Below are positions 18,743-51,372 of a stretch of DNA of 64,000 nt, in pieces. Under the pieces are notes generated by a model. The model ran no database searches. It had not been told where the DNA came from and saw only the letters and a list, made by a program, of their open reading frames with translations. This DNA is from Octopus sinensis (Eukaryota): contig NC_043003.1 of assembly GCF_006345805.1 (NCBI RefSeq), positions 80,290,001 through 80,354,000 on the forward strand, read 5' to 3'. Position numbers and translations under genes: made by a program. The stretch's first letter is position 1. Every line of letters begins with the position of its first letter.

Positions 18743-18972
18743 TGTTTCTTTATTACCCACAAGGGGCTAAACACAGAGGGGACAAACAAGGACAGACATA
18801 GGTATTAAGTCGATTACATCGACCCCAGTGCGTAACTGGTACTTAATTTATCGACCCCGAAAAGTTGAAAGGCAAAGTCGACCTCGGCGGAATTTGAACT
18901 CACAACGTAACGCAGACGAAATACCGCTAAGCATTTCGCCCGGTGTGCTAACGTTTCTGCCAGCTTGCCGCC
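18743..18972 (-). mobile_element. Full-length tRNA-derived SINE (tail ...ccccttgtgggtaataaagaaa)
   Basis: Minus strand: ggcggcaagctggcagaaacg (A box), gagttcaaattcc (B box), body gcctttcaactttcggggtcgataaattaagtaccag, 3' tail. Other copies at 35245-35603 and 51070-51310. Confidence 0.9.
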
Positions 18973-31354: not shown

Positions 31355-32296
31355 TTATTGCTTATTTAGCTTGGGTTCGAATTTATCAATAAAATTCTTT
31401 TCTCTGATTTTCCTCTCGATTTTACTTGCGCTGTGTAATTTGTAGAATGGAAATATTATATATATTTTCAAACCACATGTTGCTAGGTGGTTACTCAAAG
31501 GTATCTGACGGACCTCTGGGTCTCTAATCTGTTGTCGGTGTACACGCGAGCGTTCTGATAGTGCATTTCCCGTCTGACCTACATATATTTCTTCACAATT
31601 TTGGCATTTGATGCAGTAAATTAAATTTCTACTTTTGCAGTTCATATTCGCGTTTGTGAATATTTTCCCGGTTTTTGTATTTATATATTGGCCGGTATGT
31701 ATGACTTGGCATGTGCCACACCGGCTATCATTGCATTTAGATACAGTGAATGTTTGGTCTTTGTTGCTAAGGTCAAATTTCGCCTTTGTTAGTAATTTTT
31801 TCAAGTTTTTAGGCTGTCTTTTACTAAGAACTATAGCTCGATCCGTGATTATGTCTTTTAATTCATTACTTTGGGCAATGATTGTTAGGTTTGCTTTGGC
31901 AATTTTGAAGATATTCTGGTGACATGGGTTGTGTGTCACTATGAATGGTAGGACTTGTTCTTGTTTTCCTCTTTCTTGGGTTACCCTAAGTTGTTGTATG
32001 GGTATTTTTATAACCTGCTGTATGTCATTTTCTATAAGTAGAGATGGGTATTTTTGTTTGAGCAAAAATTCTCTTAGTTCTGTTAGGCGTTTGTTCCTGA
32101 TATTTGCATCTTCTATAATGGTACAAATTCTTCTGGCTAGGCAGTATGGGATGTTGTGTTTTGTATGTGGTAGATGGCACGACTTAAAATGTAGGTACTG
32201 ATGTGTGTCTGTGTGTTTATAGTATATATCTGTGGTGATGGTGGTGTCTTTTTTAATTACCATTATATCTAGGAATGGTAATTTGGTACTACTCAT
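31355..32296 (-). CDS. PLE polyprotein C-terminal part (RT thumb + GIY-YIG endonuclease), 313 aa open
   Basis: ORF track; CxxC in the linker (KCNDSRCGTC) and the LIYCIKC...YVGQT GIY-YIG signature. Confidence 0.85.
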   Translation of the reverse strand: MSSTKLPFLDIMVIKKDTTITTDIYYKHTDTHQYLHFKSCHLPHTKHNIPYCLARRICTIIEDANIRNKRLTELREFLLKQKYPSLLIENDIQQVIKIPIQQLRVTQERGKQEQVLPFIVTHNPCHQNIFKIAKANLTIIAQSNELKDIITDRAIVLSKRQPKNLKKLLTKAKFDLSNKDQTFTVSKCNDSRCGTCQVIHTGQYINTKTGKIFTNANMNCKSRNLIYCIKCQNCEEIYVGQTGNALSERSRVHRQQIRDPEVRQIPLSNHLATCGLKIYIIFPFYKLHSASKIERKIREKNFIDKFEPKLNKQ

Positions 32297-32699
32297 CTCC
32301 TTTGTAAATTGGAGAGATGGGTGTAGGTTGTTCAGGAGGATATTGAACTCTTCCAGAGTATTTAGAGATTCTGTCCAGATTATGAAGCAGTCGTCAAGGT
32401 ATCTCTTCCATGCCTTTTCAATATACTTTCTAAATCCAGTGCTTGGTAGAGTTGTTATAAGTATTCCATTACAGAGTTGGCGTAAACGGGAGCAAACCTT
32501 GTTCTCATCGCCGTGCCTCTAATTTGGATGTAATTCTTTCCATGGAAGAGGAATGTGTTGTTTTCTAGAATAAGTTTGACTGTGTCTAATATAAATGGCA
32601 TTGTGAATCTGCTGGGGATCATTTCTCTATGTTTTTCTACCCAGTATTTAATCGCCTTTATTCCTAAATCATTCCTAAAACCTTTATTCCTAAAACTTA

Positions 32700-32970
32700 T
32701 TTTTCAATTTCAACAAGGAATTGAAAAGTAGCATACATAATACCAAAAACAAGACAGAAAACATAACGAAACCTAGTAAAATACCACAACCAAAACGCAA
32801 AATTTATCAAGCAAACATCAACAGGAATATAAATCATAATCAGAAGAAAATCCATTTTTTTACGTCAGGACAACAAACACCGGAGAAAGAAAAAATCCAA
32901 GAGGAAACATACCCAAAACAACTGAACGTATAGACCCTAAAATAATTAATTTATCAAAAAGAGATCTTAT
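32700..32970 (+). mobile_element. Inverted PLE N-terminal fragment abutting the RT fragment
   Basis: K/N/Q-rich reading frame ending ...TLKIINLSKRDL (PLE V.NLS..L motif) on the opposite strand to the RT. Confidence 0.45.
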
Positions 32971-36483: not shown

Positions 36484-37899
36484 AGCATCGTTATACGCAG
36501 TTGAGGTATTGTATAGGATAGCCTTCTATGTAGCCTAATTAATATATCTATTATGTTCATAGGTCAATTACTGTAGTATTTGTCTTAAGATAACCTATCT
36601 CTTAATTAGCCGCAAGCTAATAGAAATTTAGGCTATGCAAGAACAGCACTAAATAAATCAACAACATTACTGCGAACTGTGAGAGAATGTGTGGATGTGT
36701 AAGTGTATTTGTGTGTGTGTGTGTGTACGTGTGTATTGGAAATATAATTTCGGTACTTTTATTGAAAAGTACTCCATGAAACGGTTTCTTCAGAGCTATG
36801 ACTATTGTCTGAAGAGCAAATGAAGCGAATAGAAAATATATGGTCTATTGCACACAAAATACACATTTTAAATACCTTATTAGTTCATGTCCTATGTATA
36901 TTTTCGCTGAATATAATCAGCCGGAGTTAAAGAAGTTTATGCTAGCTTGTCTGCCTTATATGCCAGGAGCTATCTATAATCGTTGTGGAACCTTTGACCG
37001 AACAGAAAGCGAAGACGAATCATCCGCTGAATGGAGTCGGTGTGAAAAGAATTTCTCTTAAAAGAGACATGTTTATCATGGCTTACACAGCGAGATAATC
37101 TCACAAAGCCACAAACTCCATCTCTGTCTGTCTATCTGCCTGTAACGTCTGTATACCTCTCATTCTCTCTCTTTGGTTCACGTATTGGTATCTGTTCCAT
37201 AATTTTCTGTTTATTGGTGTGAACAAAGTTTTGTATGAACAAGGTTACTTAACGGTTTGATAAATATGGATCAACATCCTAAGCCAGGGGTCGACATGAT
37301 CGGTTAAACCACTAACGTTGGGTGCCCAATCATAGCGGCATTCGTAGTGACAACAATCGTGAAAGGAATATAAAAAAAATACGGCACAAATGTTGAAAGT
37401 ATATGTTGAGACAATAAACGTTGTGATGATAATAATTTACATGCTATTATTTAAAGCATTTGTTATGATATGGGTATACACGTCTGATGAAAAATGGTAT
37501 TACACAAATAAATTGTTGGCTGTGGTGTTCTAAAATAACCTAAAACATAAATGTTAACACAGAACTCACTCCGAACATAGATAAAATATTCAGCATTCAC
37601 TGTTCAACTACCGACATCTAAAACGACGAATTAACACAGTAAACTAACCGGGTCGAACTAACACCGTCAATTACTATTTCTTTATTAGCGAATAATGACC
37701 CAATATAGAGAGGGCAATACATGGATAGACAAGACAAGTGCGGATATAAAACATAAAACAAGGAATGATAATGAATTATAAATAAATGAATGTGCAATGG
37801 CTACTCGAATCCCACTCTACTTAACTGTTCTTTATCAAAGTTTTTTATATCTTTTTGTCTGTGGTAGCATGTGTGTGGTCGTTCCGTATTTTTCTGTTT

Positions 37900-39130
37900 T
37901 ATAATATTAAAACTACTTGCATGTTTTTCCAGTTTATATACGGTTTCAAATCGTCATAGTCCACGACTGAAGGTACGGTGTCATATGACACCTCTACTCC
38001 TAATGGGTCTATGTTTAAACCGAACAATACATTTAATTTAGCATATCTTTCCTAGTCTACTAGTATATATTTTAATGTTTTCTGTATAATCTTCAGTCGG
38101 CAATTTAACTCTAATCACCAATTTGTACTTGATGATTTTTCGTTCAATTGCCGTGCTCTTTCTGTACGGGGCCTTTTCAGGGACTGTGTGTTATGCCTGT
38201 CTGTTTCTGTTTGTTTTAAGGTGAACTTGGACTATCTGGGGCGGTTTCTTTTCTTTTTGTTAGTGTTACTGGTGGTGATGCATGCTGTGTGAATGTATCG
38301 TGTGTGTTTGCCTAACAATTTCTTCTGTTTCACTATTCTTCCTTTTCTTTTTGGGACTCTTTGGGAGGGTATTTATTATTTCCTTTCTCTTTCTTTTGAG
38401 TACTTCTGTAAATCACTCTTCTTCTTTACCAACCGTACACATCTCCTGGGCTGGCCTTGTCATTTCGGTAATCCAACTTTGTTCGTGCTGGTTTCATTGG
38501 TTGTCTGGGGACACTTCATTTTAATGTGCACCTTTTCTCCGCAGTAGTAGCATGTTGGAGGTCTCCCTTCTAACACAACTCTCAGTCTTATATCCTCAGG
38601 CAGCAACACATCTTCTGCTAATTCGTTCAGGTCTTGCTGGATGACCTGAATAGCCATTTCCAAACCGTAACCGTACCAATTCATTTTCTTTGTTCTTGCC
38701 ACTTGTAAAATCTTTGTGTCCTCGTGGGTTCCATGCATCACGGCTTTTACCAGCCACGCTTCTTTAATTTCCGGTGGTACCCTGACTATCCTAATTCTTG
38801 CTACTCTTTTGCTGAAGTTGGTCGGCAGGAGTACTCATTCTTGTGACCCCAGCGTCACAGTGGAGTGATGTATTGTCTCTTGTTCGGTGGCAAACCTCAC
38901 ATCCACTGTGCCGTGTTTTCTACCTGTAGTGTAGAATGTTACAACGCTACTTCTTCCAGACATTTTTCTATAGCTTCTTCTGTAGCTATCTCAATCTTTT
39001 TACTGTTTGTTGACAGTGTTCTGTAAACCACTGTCCTCCTGACACCTCCTTCCGGATCAACGCGTTGTACTCTTGCACCTTCTCCATAGCTCCCGGCAAG
39101 TTCTTGAACTGGTTCTCAATTCATTTCATT
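37900..39130 (-). pseudogene. Unit A: divergent, decayed ORF1-like gene
   Basis: DVLLPEDIRLRVVLEGRPPTCYYCGEKVHIKMKCP (38460-38741) matches unit E PDETRLRVVVEGRPPICYNCKSRGHMKDVCP. C-terminal SYDTVPSVVDYDDLKPYI (~37930-37990) matches RYDKLPDVIDHTDLLDYM. Confidence 0.85.
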
Positions 39131-39599
39131 TTTCGAGTCTCTTCACCCAAAAATGAGGGAAAGAAAAAAAACACAAAAAAACACAGGCCCACAAACAAAA
39201 CGGCAACAGTATTCAATAAAATTCAACAACTTCAATCATAGCACACCCGCAGGGTAGAGCCTTTAGCAAAATATAACACGACATATCTGCGACAGGAATC
39301 ACAAATGATTTAACAGAACTAGCAACCATTTTAAAGAATTAGTTTGGCACTACGGCCATAACATAGAGGGGACAGCACAAGGACAGACAAAACAATACAT
39401 TGGGGCGTATAAAAACACATTATGAATATAATTAATGTGAGAATAACATGGCTTTCCTACCCCTCAAAGTAGGTAGTTCCATTTTACTCTTATTTTAATT
39501 TACAGTCTTACTTTACAGTCTTGTGTCTTTTCCTTAACACATAATTGCAACAAATGCGGCTTTATATCGTCAAAACATGCAACAGCCGGCATCACGTCG

Positions 39600-40815
39600 T
39601 ATCTATACTTAAATGATGTTATTTCAGCTCTTTTTTTCCCCTAATAGTTCTACTAACCACTCCCCTCTTTCTCTCTCCAACAGCACACCCTTCTTACCGT
39701 CATGGTTTGCCATTTTCACTCTGATAATATTTCTCGTTTTTGTTACTCTTTTCAATTTCGGCGTCTTTTTCATATACTGTGAGACTTCATAAGCTTCTCC
39801 CTGTAGGTATCGTTCTCTGATATACTTTACCACTCTCTTCGTACATCATGAATATCTCTGTCTCTACTTCGCTGTCTCTTTCGTTTCCTTCCTTGCTAGT
39901 TGAAGGTGACGGTTCGTGCGTTCGCATTTCACTTGATTTTTCATTTGGTTTTCCATTTCTTCTCTTTTCTTTCTTATTCACCTCTTCGTTTGTCTTTCTT
40001 TTTTCTCCTTCGAACTTTTTGGTGGTAATTCCAAGTTCCTTTTCTTTTCACCGCCGTAAATGGCTCCTCCTTTACGGCTGTACTCTCCTCTTCTTGAATT
40101 TCTTTTTCTGTTATTTCCTCCTAGTGTTTCTGGGGACACTTGGCCTTCATGTGTCCCCTTACACCACACACAAAAAAATATTGGAGTTCTACCCTCCACA
40201 ACAATCCTCAACCTAGTCTCATCCGGCAACACCAGCTCTTCCACGATGTTATGGATGTCTGGCAGACATATAAGGGCTGTCATATCTAACCCAGTAGTTC
40301 ACATCGTAGTTTGGGACATGGTAGAGGTTGGCTGCCACCAGTGGTGCCTTGTCAGTTTCAGGGGGCACTCTACCTATCCTTACTCTGGCCGCAAGCTTGC
40401 CACAGTAACGCAGTAGTGCTCATTAAGCTGATCTCAAGGACACAGTGGAGTATTTCTTTGCTTCATTTTCATTTACAAAGCTCACCTCTACCGTGACGAA
40501 ATTCCGTCCTCCGGTGTAGAACGTGGTACAGTCCTTCACCTCTCTTAAACACTCCTCTACTGCTTCCGTCGCTATTATTTCTACTTTCTTCGTTGTTTAA
40601 CGTTTTGTAGATACTAGTTCTTTTCTCGGTATTCTCAATAACTTCTTTGGGAGGCGTCACACTAAGACAGTCTCCCTCCTTTTTCAACAAGTCGTTACAC
40701 TTCTTGAAATTCTTGTCTTTAACTTTTATTTCACGGACTTGCAGTAGCTCTGCTGACAAGCTTTTGTCAGTCACTGTAGCATAACTTCCCGCTTGTACTG
40801 GACTATTTTCCATGT
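39600..40815 (-). pseudogene. Unit B: divergent, decayed ORF1-like gene
   Basis: LKKEGDCLSVTP..EKRTSIY (cf. LKREGDCVRVTP..EKRTITY) and EELVLPDETRLRIVVEGRTP; knuckle broken by a frameshift; C-terminal-domain remnant at 39624-39833. Confidence 0.85.
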
Positions 40816-41283
40816 TATTTAGCACTTCAACCATAAATAGGAAAGACAAATAAAAATTCCAACAAATTCAGGAAATAACAGGTTTACAATAACAGGTTAA
40901 GAATTACAGTACCAACATGGAACTGTCTCGAACACACCAATTGAACAAACACTGCCATTAACAGAACTAACAGCGGATTTTTTTATTACCCACAAAGGGG
41001 CCACGAAGAGGGGGACATTACAAGACGGGACATGGGGTACATAAAATAAAAATAAAATATGAAGTAAAGATGAATTATATGTAATGAGATGGAACGGCTT
41101 ACGAACCCCCAACTCGCAGTTCCGTTTAAAATACAATTGTACATTTCATATATTCCAGTTCAAAATACAATTTTACAGTTACATATATTCCAGTTCAAAG
41201 TACAATAACTTTACAATTTACATTACATATATTCCTGTTCAAAATACAACTTTACATCTTACAATTTTACAATTCTAATTCTT

Positions 41284-42626
41284 TTATATTGGACGTTCGT
41301 CCGTCATATAATCTAATAGGTCCATTTGGTCTATTACATCTGGTAATTTGTCATACCGTACATAACGCGTTATATGAATAGCATTAAATATCTTTTTTAA
41401 TTTTGTGTATGTTTCTTTTTCTATAATGACGCCTTTTACATCGTCACCATACAGTTTTGGGTTCACCTTCACCCTGACCAACCCTTTCCTACCTGCAAGT
41501 CTCTTTTCCACTTCTGTATTCTTGATATACATCACAACTGCTTTCAGGTTTTTTCCTGTAGGCCTTCTTCCATATTTACACGATTCCAACTGTTCGTTCA
41601 CTCTTGTCTCCCATTCTTGTTCAAACTCTGTCCTTGGCCGCTCTCTCGCCTTCTCTTTCACTTCCTGTTCTTTGCATGTTCTCTCTTCTCTCTCTTCTGC
41701 TATCTTGCTTTTGATTTTTTTCTTTTTAAGATCTTTCGGTGGTGATTCCACCCTTGATCTCTTCCTATCTTCTGTTTTTTCCTCTTCTGCACTTGCTCGT
41801 TCTTCCTCATTTAACTGCTCCTCCATTCGTGTTTCCTCCGTTTTCGCTTCCTCCACACACGCATCTTTACACTCCTCTATCACAACCTCTGGTGTTTTTG
41901 TCTTTTCCCGCGGGCACACATCCTTCATGTGGCCCCTCGATTTACAATTATAGCAAATTGGGGGTCTTCCCTCTACCACAACTCGGAGCCGAGTCTCGTC
42001 AGGGTAGACCAACTCCTCCGGGATGTTGTACAGGTCTCGCACGGTTATGTGTGCCAGAACCTGCACTGTATATCCCCACCACTTCACCTCTGCTGACTTC
42101 TCCACCTTCAGTACCTCCACATCATCCTTGCAGTTAAACAGCACTGCTGCCAGAACCTTTCCATATTAAATTCGGGTGAGATTCTATTGATTCTCATCCT
42201 CACTGCTCTCCTTCCGCAGTAACTTGGTAGCAAAGTCCACTTATCCGATTTCAAAATCCTTGTTGCATTCTTTTTTGCCTCATTTTCTGTTTCAAAATAT
42301 ACCACCACCGTGGCATATTTCTTTCCTCTTTTGAAAAATGTGGGTTCACCCTCAATTTCCTTCAGACACTTTTCTACTTCTTCCATTTCCGCTACTTCAA
42401 TTTCTTTCGACTCCACACACCACGTCCTGTACGTTATAGTACGCTTCTCTGCACTGCTTTCCTCCTCCTCGGACGGTGTGACTCTTACGCAGTCACCCTC
42501 CCTCTTTAAACTGTCGAAATACTTTTGTAAAGTCTTCTGTTCGACCACCACCTCCTCCATCTCCAGTTCACCGGCAACCAGGCCTCTGCCTGCCGCTCGC
42601 GCGTAAGTCTGCTCTTGCATTATCAA
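41284..42626 (-). pseudogene. Unit C ORF1-like gene, 1-bp frameshift
   Basis: Split into ORFs 42108-42626 and 41284-42144; gccagaacc versus gccagcaacc in the other units (~42155). Confidence 0.9.
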
Positions 42627-43028
42627 GAAAAAACTTTATTCCACGTCCTCCAACGAACTCTAACTCACAACCTCTTCACTCGAAATAAACACACCAGAAC
42701 AACTCCAAATAACTCACAAACAGAACTAACAGCGTATTTCTTTATTACCCACAAGGGGCCACGAAGAAGGGGACATTACAAGACGGGACATGGGGTACAT
42801 AAAATAAAATAAAATATGAAGTAAAGATGAATTATATGTAATGAGATGGAACGGCTTACGAACCCACAACTCGCAGTTCCGTTTAAAATACAATTGTACA
42901 TTTCATATATTCCAATACAATTTTACAGTTACGATAATTTTACAATTTTACATGTTAACATTACATATATTCCTGTTCAAAATACAACTTTACATCATAC
43001 AATTTTACAATTAACAATTCTAATTCTT

Positions 43029-44375
43029 TTACATTAGACGCTCGTCCGTCATATAATCCAACAGGTCCGTATGGTCTATCACATCTGGTAATTTATCATA
43101 CCGTACATAGTGCGTTATATGCATAGCACTAAATATCTTTTTTAATTTTATATATGTCTCTTTGTCTATAATGACGCCTTTTACCTCGTCACCATACAGT
43201 TTTGGGTTCACCTTCACCCTGACCAACCCTTTCTTACCTACAAGTCTCTTTTCCACTTCTGTATTCTTGATATACATTACAACTGCCTTCAAGTTTTTCC
43301 TGTAGGCCTTCTTCCATATTTACACGATTCCAATTGTTCGTTCACTCTTGTCTCCCATTCTTGTTCAAACTCTGTCCTTGGCCGCTCTCTCTCTCGCCTT
43401 CTCTTTTACTTCCTGTTCTTTGTGTGTTTTCTCTTCTCTCTCTTCTGCTATCTTGCTTTGGATTTTTTTCTTTTTTAGATCTTTCGGTGGTGATTCCACC
43501 CTTGATCTCTTCCTGTCTTCTGTTTTTTCCTCTTCTGCACTTGCTCGTTCTTCCTCATTTAACTGCTCCTCCATTCGTACTTCCTCCGCTTTCGCTTCCT
43601 CCACACACGCATCTCTACACTCCTCCATCACAACCTCTGGTGCTTTTGTTTTTTCTCGCGGGCACACATCCTTCATGTGGCCCCTCGATTTACAATTGTA
43701 GCAAATTGGGGGTCTTCCCTCTACCACAACTCGGAGCCGAGTCTCGTCAGGGTAGACCAACTCCTCCGGGATGTTGTACAGGTCTCGCACGGTTATGTGT
43801 GCCAGAACCTGCACCGTATATCCCCACCACTTCACCTCTGCTGACTTCTCCACCTTCAGTACCTCCACATCATCCTTGCAGTTAAACAGCACTGCTGCCA
43901 GCAACCTTTCCATATTAAACTCGGGTGAGATTCTATTGATTCTCATCCTCACTGCCCTCCTTCCGCAGTAACTTGGTAGCAAAGTCCACTTATCCGATTT
44001 CAAAATTCTTGTTGCGTTCTTTTTTGCCTCATTTTCTGTTTCAAAATATACCACCACCGTGGCATATTTCTTTCCTCTTTTGAAAAATGTGGGTTCACCC
44101 TCAATTTCCTTCAGACACTTTTCTACTTCTTCCATTTCCGCTACTTCAATTTTTTTCGACTCCACACACCACGTCCTGTACGTTATAGTACGCTTCTCTG
44201 CACTGCTTTCCTCCTCCTCGGACGGTGTGACACTTACGCAGTCACCCTCCCTCTTTAAACTGTCGAAATACTTCTGTAGAGTCTTCTGTTCGACCACCAC
44301 CTCCTCCATCTCCAGCTCACCGGCAACCAGGCCTCTGCCTGCCGCTCGCGCGTAAGTCTGCTCTTGCATTTTCAA
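43029..44375 (-). pseudogene. Unit D ORF1-like gene, 4-bp (CT)n slippage frameshift
   Basis: gccgctctctctctcgcc at ~43381-43398 versus gccgctctctcgcc in C and E; split ORFs 43365-44375 and 43029-43292. Confidence 0.9.
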
Positions 44376-44739
44376 GAAAAAAATTATTCCATGTCCTCCA
44401 ACGAACTATAAACACACCAGAATAACTCCAAATAACTTACAAACAGAACTAACAGCGGATTTCTTTATTACCCACAAGGGGCCACGAAGAAGGGGACATT
44501 ACAAGACGGGACATGGGGTACATAAAATAAAAATAAAATATGAAGTAAAGATGAATTATATGTAATGAGATGGAACGGCTTACGAACCCCCAACTCGCAG
44601 TTCCGTTTAAAATACAATTTTATATTTCATATATTCCAATACAATTTTACAGTTACAATAATTTTACAATTCTACATGTCAACATTACATATATTCAAAG
44701 TACAACTTTACATCGTACAATTTTACAATTCTAATTCTT

Positions 44740-46083
44740 TTACATTAGACGCTCGTCCGTCATATAATCCAACAGGTCCGTATGGTCTATCACATCTGGT
44801 AATTTATCATACCGTACATAGTGCGTTATATGCATAGCACTAAATATCTTTTTTAATTTTATATATGTCTCTTTGTCTATAATGACGCCTTTTACATCGT
44901 CACCATACAGTTTTGGGTTCACCTTCACCCTGACCAACCCTTTCTTACCTACAAGTCTCTTTTCCACTTCTGTATTCTTGATATACATTACAACTGCCTT
45001 CAAGTTCTTTCCTGTAGGCCTTCTTCCATATTTACACGATTCCAATTGTTCGTTCACTCTTGTCTCCCATTCTTGTTCAAACTCTGTCCTTGGCCGCTCT
45101 CTCGCCTTCTCTTTTACTTCCTGTTCTTTGTGTGTTTTCTCTTCTCTCTCTTCTGCTATCTTGCTTTGGATTTTTTTCTTTTTTAGATCTTTCGGTGGTG
45201 ATTCCACCCTTGATCTCTTCCTGTCTTCTGTTTTTTCCTCTTCTGCACTTGCTCGTTCTTCCTCATTTAACTGCTCCTCCATTCGTGCTTCCTCCGCTTT
45301 CGCTTCCTCCACACACGCATCTCTACACTCCTCCATCACAACCTCTGGTGCTTTTGTTTTTTCTCGCGGACACACATCCTTCATGTGGCCCCTCGATTTA
45401 CAATTGTAGCAAATTGGGGGTCTTCCCTCTACCACAACTCGGAGCCGAGTCTCGTCAGGGTAGACCAACTCCTCCGGGATGTTGTACAGGTCTCGCACGG
45501 TTATGTGTGCCAGGACCTGCACCGTATATCCCCACCACTTAACCTCTGCTGACTTCTCCACCTTCAGTACCTCCACATCATCCTTGCAGTTAAACAGCAC
45601 TGCCGCCAGCAACCTTTCCATATTAAATTCGGGTGAGATTCTATTGATTCTCATCCTCACTGCTCTCCTTCCGCAGTAACTTGGTAGCAAAGTCCACTTA
45701 TCCGATTTCAAAATTCTTGTTGCATTCTTTTTTGCCTCATTTTCTGTTTCAAAATATACCATCACCGTGGCATATTTCTTTCCTCTTTTGAAAAATGTGG
45801 GTTCACCCTCAATTTCCTTCAGACACTTTTCTACTTCTTCCATTTCTGCTACTTCAATTTTTTTCGACTCTACACACCACGTCCTGTACGTTATAGTACG
45901 CTTCTCTGCACTGCTTTCCTCCTCCTCGGACGGTGTGACTCTTACGCAGTCACCCTCCCTCTTTAAACTGTCGAAATACTTTTGTAAAGTCTTCTGTTCG
46001 ACCACCACCTCCTCCATTTCCAGTTCACCGGCAACTAGGCCTCTGCCTGCCGCTCGCGCGTAAGTCTGCTCTTGCATTTTCAA
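44740..46083 (-). CDS. Intact 447-aa Tx1/L1-type ORF1-like nucleic-acid-binding protein (unit E)
   Basis: Uninterrupted ORF. RRM-like segments (YATVMVYF; RMRINRISPEF), VVVEGRPPICYNCKSRGHMKDVCP = CX2CX4HX4C knuckle in the context typical of L1/Tx1 ORF1, E/K/R-rich linker, conserved ~80-aa C-terminal domain. Confidence 0.88.
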   Translation of the reverse strand: MKMQEQTYARAAGRGLVAGELEMEEVVVEQKTLQKYFDSLKREGDCVRVTPSEEEESSAEKRTITYRTWCVESKKIEVAEMEEVEKCLKEIEGEPTFFKRGKKYATVMVYFETENEAKKNATRILKSDKWTLLPSYCGRRAVRMRINRISPEFNMERLLAAVLFNCKDDVEVLKVEKSAEVKWWGYTVQVLAHITVRDLYNIPEELVYPDETRLRVVVEGRPPICYNCKSRGHMKDVCPREKTKAPEVVMEECRDACVEEAKAEEARMEEQLNEEERASAEEEKTEDRKRSRVESPPKDLKKKKIQSKIAEEREEKTHKEQEVKEKARERPRTEFEQEWETRVNEQLESCKYGRRPTGKNLKAVVMYIKNTEVEKRLVGKKGLVRVKVNPKLYGDDVKGVIIDKETYIKLKKIFSAMHITHYVRYDKLPDVIDHTDLLDYMTDERLM

Positions 46084-46475
46084 GAAAAAAAAAAAAAAAA
46101 AAAATTATTCCACGTCCTCCAACGAACTCCAACTCACAACCTCTTCACTCGAAATAAACACACCAGAATAAACACACCAGAACAACTCCAAACAACTCAC
46201 AAACAGAACTAACAGCGTATTTCTTTATTACCCACAAGGGGCCACGAAGAAGGGGACATTACAAGACGGGACATGGGGTACATAAAATAAAATAAAATAT
46301 GAAGTAAAGATGAATTAGATGTAATGAGATGGAACGGCTTACGAACCCCCAACTCGCAGTTCCGTTTAAAAAACAATTACACATACAGTTTTACAGTTAC
46401 AATAATTTTACAATTCTACACGTCAACATTACATATATTCAAAATACAACTTTAAATTTTACAATTCTAATTCTT

Positions 46476-47799
46476 TTACATTGGACGCTCGTCCGTCATA
46501 TAATCCAACAGGTCCGTTTGCTCTATAACATCTGGCAATTATCGTACCGCACATAATGCGTTATATGCATGGCATTAAACATCTTTTTTAATTTTATATA
46601 TGTCTCTTTGTCTATAATGACGCCTTTCACGTCGTCACCATACAGCTTTGGGTTCACCTTCACCCTGACCAACCCTTTCTTACCTACAAGTCTCTTCTCC
46701 ACTTCTGTATTCTTGATATACATTACAACTGCCTTCAAGTTTTTTCCTGTCGGCCTTCTTCCATATCTGCACGATTCCAATTGCTCGTTCACTCTTGTCT
46801 CCCATTCTTTTTCAAACTCTGTCCTTGGCCGCTCTCTCACCTTCTCTTTTACTTCCTGTTCTTTGTCTTCTCTCTCTTCTGCTATCTTGCTTTTAATTTT
46901 TTTCTTTTTTTGATCTTTCGGTGGTGATTCCACCCTTGATCTCTTCCTGTCTTCCGTCTTTTCCTCTTCTGCACTCTCTCGTTCTTCCTCACTTAACCGC
47001 TCCTCCATTCGTACTTCCTCCGCTTTCGCCTCCTCCACACACGCGTCCTCCATCACAACCTCCGGTGCTTTAGATTTTCTCGCGGGCACACATCCTTCAT
47101 GTGGCCCCTTGATTTACAATTGTAGCAAATTGGGGGTCTTCCCTCTACCACAACTCGGAGCCGTGTCTCGTCAGGGTAGACCAGCTCCTCCGGGATGTTG
47201 TACAGGTCTCGCACGGTAATGTGCGCGAGAACCTGCACCGTATATCCCCACCATTTCACCTCCGCTGACTTCTCCACCTTCAGTACTTCCACATCATCCT
47301 TGCAGTTAAACAGCACTGCTGCCAGCAACCTTTCCATATTAAATTCGGGTGAGATTCTATTGATTCTCATCCTCACTGCTCTCCTTCCGCAGTAACTTGG
47401 TAGCAAAGTCCACTTATCCGATTTCAAAAGTCTTGTTGCGTTCTTTTTTGCCTCATTTTCTGTTTCAAAATATACCACCACCGTGGCATATTTCTTTCCT
47501 CTTTTGAAAAATGTGGGTTCACCCTCAATTTCCTTCAGACATTCTTCTACTTCTTTCATTTCCGCTACTTCAATTTTTTTCGACTCCACACACCACGTCC
47601 TGTACGTTATAGTACGCTTCTCTGCACTGCTTTCCTCCTCCTCGGACGGTGTGACTCTTACGCAGTCACCCTCCCTCTTTAAACTGTCGAAATACTTTTG
47701 TAAAGTCTTCTGTTCGACCACCACCTCCTCCATCTCCAGCTCACCGGCAACCAGGCCTCTGCCTGCCGCTCGCGCGTAAGTCTGCTCTTGCATTTTCAA
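46476..47799 (-). pseudogene. Unit F ORF1-like gene, two frameshifts plus in-frame deletions
   Basis: 1-bp deletions at ~47070 and ~46535; in-frame losses (MEDACV vs MEECRDACV; REDKEQE vs REEKTHKEQE). Confidence 0.9.
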
Positions 47800-49659
47800 G
47801 AAAAAAAAATTATTCCACGTCCTCCAACGAACTCTAACTCACAACCTCTTCACTCGAAATAAACACACCTGAATAAACACACCAGAATAACTCCAAATAA
47901 CTTACAAACAGAACTAACAGCGTCAAATACAGTACATTCAGTTCTTATTTATTGTAATCGGTTAGTCCACTTTCAGTCATGTGGGGTGTTCAGGATTTTC
48001 TCATAACAGCATTATGTGTGCGCTTCGTGATATTTTAAAAAGGAATTATTTAATATGTGGTGCTAAATTTCTTTTGCACACTTTCCACAATCCATGTAAA
48101 TATCTTCACATCATAGATTTGTCCCCGGTTTAATGTAAAAGATTTACAATAATTTACTGACGGGTTTCGCGTCGTTGGTGTCAAGAAAATCACTAAGCAC
48201 TCAATTAGAAGATTGTTCCTTTCACTTGGATCTAGCAGTCCTCGGGACATTAATTTAACTCACACCTCCTGGCATTGTATCAAATTTCTGGCAGCTTCTT
48301 ACTAAATCTCGAAGTAAAGTTTGTCAGCTTTGCGCATTTATGTGTCTATCCATGTGAGCTTGTGCGTACCAGGTGTGTGTGTGTATACGTCTGTGTGTGA
48401 TCAATTGTTATAGTTATGCAACCATCCTCTTCTGTTCATGACAACACTATATTCTCATAGTGTAGAACACGTTCTACAGAAAATTGATTGGTTCCGTAAC
48501 ATATGCAGAGGGATATATGCGTCAAGACTACAGCTAAGTTTCTGAATTTATCTCAACGGTCATCAAAATGGTATTATTAAACACTGCTTCTCTAAATCAC
48601 TTATACCTTCGGCAATAAATTCTAATATAATATGATAATTAAAGTTCCAAATGTTACGTAGTATCTTATTAAGGCACCTAGGGATAATTTGAAAATCACT
48701 GTTCATTAATCTATTGATTGATTTAATTATCAAATGATATAGTTTCACATGAAAACCTTGAAACAAAAGGCTACTATGTGAAGACAGGTTTCCAAGGCAA
48801 AATGTCTTTTTGTCTAGTTACTAGCTCCAATTCATCATCTTCTATCCGTTAAAATATTTCTGTCGGTCTTCTGGTACGTTTCCTTACAAGATTAAGATTG
48901 CTCTTTTGAGACCTGTATTTATGTGTACATACATGTATGTATGTGAGTGTGTACGTGTGTGTATATGTGTCTATGTGTGTATATATTTCGGTTAAATGAA
49001 TAATAGAGCATGTAATCGTTTTTTTCTTTATTATAAGTGCACATTATCGGTATTACTGGAGTTAGGTTTATGAATTCCTCATGTGCTTTGTGGTTATTGT
49101 CATTGTGCTTCTTGCTTCTTCCCAGCATGCTGTTGCTGTTGACAAAATGGCCGATACCATACATGTTTTACTATTGCTGCGATACCTCTAGTTTCTTAGA
49201 TAGGATTTATCAGCTGAGAACTTTAAGGTATAGAAATATGTGTCAATGAAAGTTTTGTCTATTATGCTGAGTTGCTAAGCAACTAGAGCATGCTGAAAAT
49301 GCTCCTCATCGTAGAACACTTTAATCAGGATGAATGGTTATAGTGTTCATAACTGGGCATTTAAAGCATTATAAATCAGAACTTTCGAGTGAACTTAGTG
49401 TCAGCAAGTAAACCTTACAAAATAGCATAGGTTGCTACCAAAAGAAGTATTGATTTTCTTTGCGTCACATGTTTTTGTCCTCCATTTTATGATCTTGAGC
49501 GTTTTGATCAATTCTACCTCTCACTACAAACTTGTGGCTTCAGTGTAAAATTTATATGGTAAAATTTGTGTCTCAACTCAAATTCTAACAAAGTGTATGT
49601 TCAGAAATAAATTCTCAAAACGAAATTCAAATCCTTTGATTCCCTCATAAATATTAAAC

Positions 49660-50939: not shown

Positions 50940-51372
50940 CTTTTAATTTTGGCACAAGGACTTCAGTATTGAGGGAAGGAAGACGTGAAGTACATCTAAA
51001 CCAGAGCTCAACCGGTAACCACTCTATCGACCACGTAGTGTTGAAATTTTAAATCAAAACGTAAATACCTATTTCTTTACTACCCACAAGGGGTTAAACG
51101 CAGAGGGGACAAACAAGGACAGACAAACGGATTAAGTCGATTGCATCGACCCCAGTGCGTAACTGGTACATATTAAATCGACCCCGGAAGGATGAAAGGC
51201 AAAGTCGACCTCGGCGGAATTTGAACTCAGAGCGTAACGGCTGACGAAATACGTCTACGCATTTCGCCCGGCGTGTAAACATTTATGCCAGCTCGCCGCC
51301 TTTTCTAGCTCGCCGCCTTCAAAGCGTAAATACCGTTAAGTATTTTTCTGGCAGGCTAACGATTCTCCAAGT
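50940..51372 (-). mobile_element. Young SINE (51070-51310) nested in an older SINE with ~16-bp TSD
   Basis: tcaaaacgtaaatacc on the left (ending ~51069) and tcaaagcgtaaatacc on the right (~51319-51335); the flanks are body and head remnants of the same family. Confidence 0.75.

What the first reader, a model, noticed from the sequence alone, without database searches (positions are those of the whole stretch)
37675..47922. Six-unit head-to-tail array of ORF1-only 'half-LINE' elements with no reverse transcriptase
Seen: six contiguous 1.65-1.76-kb intronless units, same orientation, no spacer DNA. Each has a 5'UTR, one ORF (RRM-like x2, EGRPPxCxxC...H...C knuckle, charged linker, C-terminal domain) and a 3'UTR with AATAAA about 10 nt from the end (eroded in unit B); no ORF2 anywhere. 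Known: this knuckle context typifies L1/Tx1-clade ORF1. ORF1-only non-autonomous elements exist (mammalian HAL1; Drosophila HeT-A, which forms head-to-tail arrays), and many Tx1-clade families are target-site specific. Inference: a non-autonomous, site-targeted ORF1-only family stacking at an interstitial locus. I know of no description of this in molluscs, but cannot search. Alternative: a domesticated ORF1 gene cluster or a TE-silencing (piRNA or dominant-negative) locus.
Basis: partly seen in the sequence, partly recalled or inferred. Interest (0 to 1): 0.92.

Follow-up and report, generated by a model that had tools for sequence, protein, structure and literature searches.

The report
ORF1-only half-LINEs stacked at one site
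An octopus chromosome carries six copies of a retrotransposon that kept its RNA-binding gene but lost its reverse transcriptase, all inserted one after another into the same 13-bp target site. The full-length LINE that most likely mobilises them was found elsewhere in the same genome.

Summary
On the minus strand, 37655-47923, six head-to-tail units of 1.64-1.75 kb each carry one ORF and no ORF2. Only unit E is intact (445 aa). C-F are 90-94% identical; A and B are old, distant subfamilies.

The protein is a genuine LINE ORF1p of the RRM+CCHC type. The AlphaFold model (pLDDT 83) matches tandem-RRM proteins. The same module is ORF1 of bicistronic endonuclease-RT LINEs.

The likely partner is a 5.15-kb LINE (L039). 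It has a 445-aa homologous ORF1, an endonuclease-RT-zf ORF2, an identical 3' tail, and sits at the nucleotide that many half-elements target in a foldback-like repeat ('Q').

Arrays form by sequential same-site insertion, not duplication. Units of one array scatter across the family tree, and a 13-bp target-site duplication occurs seven times around six units. Stacking is family-wide (20 of 67 sampled loci), and the LINEs stack too. dN/dS of 0.08-0.34 shows long-term selection on the ORF.

Each ingredient has a precedent (HAL1, HeT-A, Tx1L/Tx1D, tandem SINEU-3). This is a new variant in cephalopods, not a new kind.

The parts
47911..47923 (-). TSD copy 1 (ACGCTGTTAGTTC), upstream of unit F
   Evidence: 13-mer found 8x in the window vs 1.1 expected; six matches lie exactly at unit boundaries
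46219..47910 (-). Unit F: ORF1-only element, ORF broken (frameshifts and stops); a different subfamily from D/E
46206..46218 (-). TSD copy 2
44459..46205 (-). Unit E: the only intact copy; ORF 44740-46077 (445 aa), 5'UTR 128 nt, 3'UTR 281 nt
45673..45900 (-). Unit E, RRM-like domain 1 (aa ~60-135)
   Evidence: AF2 model pLDDT >90; Foldseek tandem-RRM hits
45427..45669 (-). Unit E, RRM-like domain 2 (aa ~137-217)
45370..45411 (-). Unit E, CCHC zinc knuckle (aa 223-236)
   Evidence: Pfam zf-CCHC E 0.0018, below cut-off; family profile hits only CCHC knuckles in the PDB
44764..45006 (-). Unit E, C-terminal beta-alpha-beta-beta-alpha-beta domain (aa ~358-438) after a charged helical linker; conserved family-wide, no detectable homolog in the partner LINE
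44459..44483 (-). Unit E 3' module: 4-bp covarying hairpin plus TAATAAAGAAAT terminus, shared with the partner LINE and a SINE
44446..44458 (-). TSD copy 3
42736..44445 (-). Unit D: full-length ORF with 2 stop codons
42723..42735 (-). TSD copy 4
40977..42722 (-). Unit C: frameshift near aa 155
40964..40976 (-). TSD copy 5
39328..40963 (-). Unit B: old, distant subfamily (40-55% aa), heavily broken, eroded tail
39316..39327 (-). TSD copy 6, degenerate (GGTTGCTAGTTC)
37668..39315 (-). Unit A: oldest-looking, distant subfamily (27-39% aa); ends ..GCTAATAAAGAAAT at 37676 plus 8 extra nt (AGTAATTG)
37655..37667 (-). TSD copy 7 (ACGGTGTTAGTTC), followed by unique flank

Best explanation
The locus is a stack of six independent insertions of a non-autonomous, ORF1-only LINE derivative (a 'half-LINE'). 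Each unit is a retrocopy: a 5'UTR, one ORF encoding an RRM-RRM-CCHC ORF1p with a charged linker and a family-specific C-terminal domain, and a 3'UTR ending in a small hairpin plus TAATAAAGAAAT. No unit has a reverse transcriptase. They are copied in trans by the ORF2 protein of a low-copy autonomous L1-superfamily LINE in the same genome, which carries the same 3' module (inferred, not shown). Integration is by target-primed reverse transcription with a 13-18 bp staggered cut. Because the cut duplicates the target, an intact target copy remains next to the inserted element and can be cut again. Repeated insertions give unit-TSD-unit-TSD chains in one orientation. The family's preferred target is one nucleotide position in the inverted repeat of a foldback-like repeat (Q). 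A CCAAT/TATA arm there sits about 31 nt upstream and probably supplies the promoter for master copies (inferred). The window's array is an off-target site that became a hot spot after the first hit, possibly because the element's A-rich 3' end resembles the left half of the Q site (speculative).
For: Shown: (a) Family dispersal. 97 scored matches on about 25 chromosomes, 52-97% identity, many intact. (b) Fixed 3' end; a retrocopy outside Q with its own 17-bp TSD (L004) still carries the Q-derived leader. (c) Filled versus empty Q site in one locus gives an 18-bp TSD. TSDs match the local Q variant in L003, L008 and L018. Q is a repeat with about 274 candidate TIR copies, many uninterrupted. 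(d) The window has 7 copies of a 13-mer around 6 units, also flanking the unrelated subfamilies A and B. (e) Units of one array are not monophyletic, in the window and in six other arrays. (f) 20 of 67 sampled loci hold 2-4 same-strand copies at about 1.7 kb, with no opposite-strand neighbours. (g) Partner: L039 holds a 5154-bp LINE at the same Q nucleotide with a 16-bp TSD, a 445-aa ORF1 (36% id, E 7e-35), an ORF2 with Exo_endo_phos + RVT_1 (1.8e-29) + zf-RVT, and a unit-type tail (GGCCCCTTGTGGGTAATAAAGAAAT; last 46 nt 91% identical to unit E). (h) Partner-clade LINEs also lie at about 5.1-5.3 kb same-strand spacing and next to half-units (vs 11). (i) The 3' hairpin covaries: 92% of cells paired vs 71% in shuffles, 0/500. 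(j) dN/dS is 0.08-0.34, with dS saturated between deep subfamilies. (k) Precedent for sequential tandem insertion sandwiching a TSD, and for use of a flanking promoter, in Tx1-dependent SINEU-3 (PMC4494074).
Against: Trans-mobilisation is inferred from the shared tail and target; no activity data exist. The one partner copy examined has a frameshift in its endonuclease region; the ORF2 status of other copies is unknown because the ORF2 genome search failed. The window's site is not Q-like, so why it was re-used six times is unexplained beyond the speculative half-site mimicry. No consistent age polarity along arrays was found. A few arrays contain near-identical or identically truncated units (C5:6229; L007), so some DNA-level duplication also occurs. 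The promoter role of Q rests on sequence motifs alone. All genome-wide counts come from capped samples.
Confidence: 0.8

Rival explanations
1. Local tandem duplication: one inserted unit was amplified in place by unequal crossing-over or replication slippage, as in a satellite or gene cluster.
For: Regular ~1.7-kb period and single orientation. A few arrays elsewhere have near-identical units (C5:6229) or an identically 5'-truncated unit repeated (L007).
Against: Window units belong to at least four subfamilies. F groups with chromosome 3/4 copies, C sits apart, and A/B are 27-55% aa identical. D and E are no closer to each other than to copies on other chromosomes. Duplication would copy one subfamily.
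Confidence: 0.06
2. Single-event concatemer: the reverse transcriptase jumped end-to-end between several template RNAs during one integration.
For: End-to-end template jumping is known for R2 RT (Bibillo and Eickbush 2004, listed in PMC4494074). Units abut without other DNA.
Against: A single event leaves one TSD pair, not a locus-specific 13-mer at every junction. F's closest relatives elsewhere carry a different (Q-type) leader. A and B are far more decayed than C-F, implying different ages.
Confidence: 0.05
3. Host function: a domesticated ORF1 gene cluster, or a uni-strand piRNA or dominant-negative silencing locus.
For: One intact ORF under purifying selection. The uni-directional TE stack resembles uni-strand piRNA clusters (own knowledge).
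Against: Five of six window copies are pseudogenes. Near-identical intact copies are dispersed genome-wide with TSDs, so selection is explained by TE master lineages. No expression or small-RNA data were available.
Confidence: 0.05
4. Penelope-like or retrozyme-type element: arrays made by a GIY-YIG retroelement, as PLEs typically form tandems.
For: A PLE fragment (RT + GIY-YIG) lies 6 kb away at 31358-32703. A CTGATGA..GAAAC motif occurs near one diverged copy.
Against: No hammerhead or any other Rfam family at units or junctions, even at E up to 1-5. The PLE lacks the shared tail. An APE-type LINE with the identical tail and target was found.
Confidence: 0.01

Closest known systems
HAL1 ('half-L1') of mammals (Bao and Jurka 2010, cited in PMC4494074)
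   Same: A non-autonomous L1-superfamily derivative that keeps ORF1 and the 3' end, lacks ORF2, and depends on a full-length relative.
   Different: Type I (RRM-RRM-CCHC) rather than Type II ORF1p. Stringent hairpin tail, no poly(A). Site-targeted and stacking. Deeply diversified: ORF1 is only ~36% identical to the partner's, with no DNA similarity beyond ~100 nt and a distinct C-terminal domain. No trace of a recent internal deletion.
Drosophila HeT-A with TART/TAHRE (PMC5537684, PMC4700185)
   Same: A gag/ORF1-only element without RT that forms head-to-tail, single-orientation arrays mixed with RT-encoding relatives.
   Different: HeT-A extends chromosome ends without TSDs and serves a host function. 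These arrays are interstitial, flanked and interleaved by TSDs, and made by endonuclease-dependent insertion.
Xenopus Tx1L in Tx1D (composite Tx1; PMC4494074)
   Same: An L1/Tx1-type LINE that inserts at one specific site inside a non-autonomous TIR DNA element. The octopus partner and half-elements do the same in Q.
   Different: The target element is unrelated. Here the dominant occupant is an ORF1-only derivative. Tx1-clade membership of the octopus LINE was not tested.
SINEU-3 tandem insertions in Mariner-N4_AMi (Kojima 2015, PMC4494074)
   Same: A dependant of a target-specific LINE, with a 16-bp TSD at one site of a DNA transposon. 'Tandem insertions sandwiching a TSD' arise by sequential insertion, and master copies may use a flanking promoter.
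   Different: SINEU is a short non-coding SINE, usually seen as dimers. Here the dependant encodes a selected 445-aa protein and forms stacks of up to six, including at a non-canonical site.

Membership tests
LINE ORF1p, Type I (Khazina and Weichenrieder scheme, as summarised in PMC5203782) | At least one RRM domain | tested here: met
   AF2 model pLDDT 83, domains >90. Foldseek top hits are two-RRM modules (SFPQ/NONO, IMP3 RRM12, Sxl, UP1), prob ~1, E 8e-5 to 1e-3. Pfam RRM models do not hit by sequence.
LINE ORF1p, Type I (Khazina and Weichenrieder scheme, as summarised in PMC5203782) | CCHC zinc knuckle following the RRM(s) | tested here: met
   C-x2-C-x4-H-x4-C at aa 223-236. Pfam zf-CCHC E 0.0018 (18.7 bits, below the 20.8 cut-off). 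The family profile hits ZCCHC8 and nucleocapsid knuckles. The partner ORF1 knuckle passes the cut-off.
LINE ORF1p, Type I (Khazina and Weichenrieder scheme, as summarised in PMC5203782) | Homologous protein occurs as the first ORF of a bicistronic endonuclease-RT LINE | tested here: met
   L035, L036, L039.
HAL1-type ORF1-only non-autonomous LINE | Carries ORF1 and lacks ORF2 as a family trait, not as random truncation | tested here: met
   No ORF2 in the window or downstream of diverged members. Same architecture in subfamilies with saturated dS; dN/dS 0.08-0.34.
HAL1-type ORF1-only non-autonomous LINE | Shares the 3' recognition end with an autonomous LINE | tested here: met
   Identical 25-nt tail in L039's LINE and ~100 nt at 75% identity. 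Covarying hairpin.
HAL1-type ORF1-only non-autonomous LINE | Derived from the autonomous LINE by internal deletion of ORF2 | tested here: inconclusive
   ORF1 homology and equal length (445 aa) fit. No DNA similarity remains outside the tail, and the C-terminal domain has no detectable LINE counterpart.
HAL1-type ORF1-only non-autonomous LINE | Mobilised in trans by the partner's ORF2p | not testable with these tools
   Needs a retrotransposition assay. Indirect support: same target nucleotide and TSD length.
Tx1 clade of L1-superfamily LINEs | RT phylogeny places ORF2 within Tx1 | not tested
   No reference Tx1 sequences at hand. The related L035 ORF2 is closest to human L1 ORF2p among solved structures (E 2e-27), far better than R2. 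zf-RVT is present.
Tx1 clade of L1-superfamily LINEs | Target-sequence-specific insertion | tested here: met
   Partner and half-elements at one Q nucleotide. A sister LINE is flanked on both sides by (ATCT)n.
HeT-A-like telomeric retroposon | Arrays at chromosome ends, added to free ends without TSDs | tested here: not met
   The window lies at 80.3 Mb of a 117.5-Mb contig. TSDs are present at every junction.
Penelope-like element / hammerhead retrozyme | Hammerhead ribozyme in the terminal repeats; GIY-YIG RT partner | tested here: not met
   No Rfam hit at permissive thresholds. The partner has an APE-type endonuclease.

The most novel reading that the evidence does not exclude
The half-LINE may be more than a passive parasite. 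It could be a long-lived lineage whose protein (with its own C-terminal domain) is selected to capture the partner's ORF2p. Its A-rich TAATAAAGAAAT end might then do three jobs: RT recognition site, mimic of the left half of the endonuclease target so that every insertion creates a new landing pad, and TATA-like promoter about 30 nt upstream of the next unit's start. That would be a HeT-A-like 'neighbour-driven' promoter at interstitial sites. Arrays would then be self-propagating, self-expressing units that free the family from its Q promoter.
Probability: 0.15. Interest if true: 0.8.

Novelty: new variant of a known kind. Interest (0 to 1): 0.58.

Why it matters
ORF1-only LINE derivatives are well documented essentially only in mammals (HAL1) and at Drosophila telomeres (HeT-A). 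This is a third, independent case in a cephalopod. It has a Type I ORF1p, a defined partner, a defined target and TSD-marked arrays that record insertion history base by base. It gives a tractable system for three questions: what ORF1p contributes in cis and in trans, how a dependant outnumbers its autonomous LINE, and how target-specific LINEs re-use sites. It also matters for annotation. Octopus gene sets contain these ORFs as 'uncharacterized' proteins and as parts of chimeric gene models. The same LINE clade appears to drive an abundant SINE.

Tried and rejected
1. Word-indexed homology search with the full protein found nothing, probably because of the charged linker. Restricting it to aa 20-245 gave one hit. 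The exhaustive HMMER search was needed.
2. No ORF2 lies within 4-5 kb downstream of diverged members L032-L034.
3. The Penelope/retrozyme idea, raised by a neighbouring GIY-YIG fragment, failed: no hammerhead.
4. The Pfam RVT_1 genome scan gave 60,160 candidates, and the top 150 were not near any unit, so it was uninformative.
5. The abundant (ATCT)n-specific LINE (L036-L038) is related (ORF1 31% id, similar tail), but its tail and target differ, so I rejected it as the direct partner.
6. The idea that the window's site is a decayed Q copy is not supported: 88 of 300 shuffles score at least as high, and the site-level score is at the null.
7. The idea that the C-terminal domain is a fused ORF2 remnant found no significant match in any frame of the partner LINE.
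8. The first AF2 model, from 11 sequences, had pLDDT 51 and was unusable.
9. The genome search with the partner ORF2 failed twice for technical reasons. Intact ORF2 copies of the partner were therefore not counted, and the 445-aa ORF1 was used instead.


Full report
**Observation.**
The feature lies on the minus strand. Six same-orientation units occupy window 37655-47923. Four of them (C-F, 40977-47910) are 90.4-93.5% identical to unit E at DNA level, with periods of 1708-1749 bp. Units A and B are detectable only at protein level, at 27-55% identity, and are riddled with frameshifts. Only unit E has an intact ORF (44740-46077, 445 aa). D carries two stop codons, and C and F have frameshifts. 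Each unit ends in ...GGGTAATAAAGAAAT with no poly(A) tail. tblastn with two LINE ORF2 queries finds nothing in the 64 kb. The 6-10% divergence and the different lesions among C-F argue against an assembly artefact.

**The protein.**
- Pfam sees only a sub-threshold CCHC knuckle, and PDB sequence search sees nothing.
- An exhaustive HMMER search found 384 relatives. All ten looked up by name, among the best hits, are either 'uncharacterized' octopod proteins (Octopus bimaculoides, O. sinensis, O. vulgaris, Argonauta hians) or unnamed metagenomic sequences. Five of the ten long hits scanned are chimeric gene models (WD40, RGS, LDLa, astacin, CCHC repeats), and none of the ten has an RT or endonuclease domain.
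- With 149 sequences, AlphaFold reached pLDDT 83, with domains above 90. The model shows two beta-alpha-beta-beta-alpha-beta domains (aa ~60-135 and 137-217), the knuckle (223-236), long charged helices, and a third beta-alpha-beta-beta-alpha-beta domain (358-438).
- Foldseek returns two-RRM modules as top hits (SFPQ/NONO, IMP3 RRM12, Sxl, hnRNP A1 UP1).
- The family profile matches only CCHC knuckles in the PDB.
- This arrangement is the Type I ORF1p architecture as summarised in PMC5203782.

**It is a LINE ORF1.**
A Tara Oceans contig (L035) encodes a protein whose aa 306-499 align to aa 58-256 of the window protein (29% identity, E 3e-20). Ten nucleotides downstream, a second ORF starts with Exo_endo_phos (E 1.2e-12) and the beginning of RVT_1. 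Upstream lies the zf-RVT end of another ORF2. That ORF2 is closest to human LINE-1 ORF2p among solved structures (E 2e-27). The window's genome holds an abundant related LINE whose ORF1 is 31% identical (E 3e-31). Its 3' end has the same build, CTTGTAAT...hairpin...TAATAAAGAAAC, but it sits in (ATCT)n on both sides.

**The family.**
Searching the window's own 2.72-Gb genome gave 97 scored matches out of 14,954 loose first-look candidates. They lie on about 25 chromosomes, at 52-97% identity, and many are intact. dN/dS between intact copies is 0.08-0.34, and dS is saturated between deep subfamilies. Three diverged members have no ORF2 within 4-5 kb downstream, and one of them is itself a three-unit array. 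The ORF1-only architecture is therefore old and selected, not a set of random ORF2 truncations. A and B are closer to this family than to LINE ORF1s.

**Target and promoter context.**
At about 11 of about 22 sampled loci, the first unit is preceded by the same arm (CCAAT ... TATAAAA ... about 31 nt ... CGTCTTAGG) and the last unit is followed by ~50-nt repeats. Dissection of one locus shows a foldback-like element, Q, with ~360-bp inverted repeats. One repeat is empty (...AAAAATAA|AGGTCTTAGGTTTTTAGT|TCTTC...). The other is filled, which gives an 18-bp TSD. TSDs match each local Q variant (L003, L008, L018), so the insertions are independent. Q has about 274 candidate TIR copies, many of them uninterrupted. 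A retrocopy outside Q (L004) has its own 17-bp TSD yet carries the Q-derived leader. This indicates that masters are transcribed from Q (inference).

**The partner.**
I reasoned that the partner should also occupy Q sites, so I fetched a Q hit with an unidentified insert (L039). It holds a 5154-bp LINE at the same nucleotide, with these features:
- a 16-bp TSD (CTTAGGTTTCCAGTCC);
- an ORF1 of 445 aa, 36% identical over aa 38-243 (E 7e-35), with a CCHC knuckle;
- an ORF2 with Exo_endo_phos, RVT_1 (E 1.8e-29) and zf-RVT, with one frameshift in this copy;
- a tail, GGCCCCTTGTGGGTAATAAAGAAAT, that matches the unit-type tail exactly.

At DNA level only the last ~100 nt are shared. The lineage is low-copy, with about 17 ORF1 matches at 70% identity or above, several with an intact ORF1. 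Three SINE-like copies in the window share the same tail. The 4-bp hairpin before TAATAAAG covaries across LINEs, half-elements and the SINE: 92% of cells are paired vs 71% in shuffles, 0 of 500 shuffles reach that, and two pairs carry double changes. This is a small sample.

**How the array formed.**
- A maximum-likelihood tree of 37 units shows that units of one array are not monophyletic. Window F groups with chromosome 3/4 copies, C sits apart, and only D and E are sisters. The same holds for arrays on C1, C3, C8, C17, C30 and C5.
- The 13-mer ACG[C/G]TG[T/C]TAGTTC occurs seven times: upstream of F, at all five internal junctions (degenerate at B|A), and after A. It also flanks the unrelated subfamilies A and B. 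The window has 8 matches against 1.1 expected, and 0 of 100 shuffles reach 8.
- Other loci have their own junction sequences. This is the n+1 TSD signature of sequential insertion into one site.
- Among the best 97 matches, 20 of 67 loci are same-strand stacks and none has an opposite-strand neighbour.
- Partner-clade LINEs lie at 5.1-5.3-kb same-strand spacing and next to half-units (vs 11).
- Kojima (PMC4494074) described the same logic for Tx1-dependent SINEU-3.

**Limits.**
The window's reconstructed empty site is not Q-like, so its sixfold re-use is unexplained. Mimicry of the Q left half-site by the element's tail is speculation. Trans-mobilisation, promoter use and Tx1 membership are inferred or untested. 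Sampling was capped throughout. I found no description of an ORF1-only stacking family in cephalopods, but that search covers only the held library.

Noticed in passing
window 31358-32703 (-): 5'-truncated Penelope-like element: RT C-terminal part (YLDD) plus a GIY-YIG endonuclease domain (Pfam E 6.7e-6). It has no shared tail with the half-LINEs.
   Followed up: partly
window minus-strand 3' ends at 51071, 35372, 18744; L034 3373, 3534: tRNA-like SINE copies (~165 nt; ...GAGTTCAAATTCC...GGGGTCGAT...) end in the same hairpin + TAAAGAAAT tail as the half-LINE and its partner. Some are followed directly by the head of another copy, so the SINE appears to stack too.
   Followed up: partly
L002/L031 (G000:C3:56745000-56753864); one search hit list: 'Q' is a foldback-like repeat: a long palindrome around a 21-nt centre, with outward-facing CCAAT/TATA arms, three ~50-nt repeats and a 640-nt loop. 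There are ~274 candidate TIR copies, often clustered (e.g. C15:25469688-25474313 in + + - - order). Its class and mobility are unknown.
   Followed up: partly
L031 (-) 4020->3463: A Helitron/Pif1-like helicase fragment (…GLPPHHLCLKVGAPIMVLRNL…) lies immediately beyond the second Q copy. It was recognised by eye only, not tested.
   Followed up: no
L035 (Tara Oceans contig ERZ907901, 6159 bp): An autonomous relative from an unidentified marine organism is itself head-to-tail: ORF2 end (zf-RVT), ~890 nt, then ORF1 (861 aa), then ORF2 (APE-RT).
   Followed up: partly
L036-L038 (G000:C3:74657000-74664300; C8:62234900-62236100): An abundant, very uniform LINE of the same clade (28,059 loose candidates; many intact ~1149-aa ORF2 frames) is flanked on both sides by (ATCT)n, which suggests a microsatellite-specific and possibly active LINE.
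   Followed up: partly
G000:C2:29611307-29617658 (-); C9:71067370-71070349 (-): Apparent mixed arrays: a partner-type LINE ORF1 lies on the same strand just downstream of half-element units. Based on coordinates only; no sequence was fetched.
   Followed up: no
window 18896-18908 and 51223-51235 (-): Two further near-matches to the 13-mer TSD motif lie ~150 nt upstream of SINE 3' ends, at homologous positions in the SINE's tRNA-like head. Probably coincidence.
   Followed up: no
P0028, P0043, P0145, P0114: Public octopus gene models fuse this ORF1 domain to WD40, RGS, LDL-receptor or astacin domains. These are likely annotation chimeras caused by unmasked half-LINE copies.
   Followed up: no
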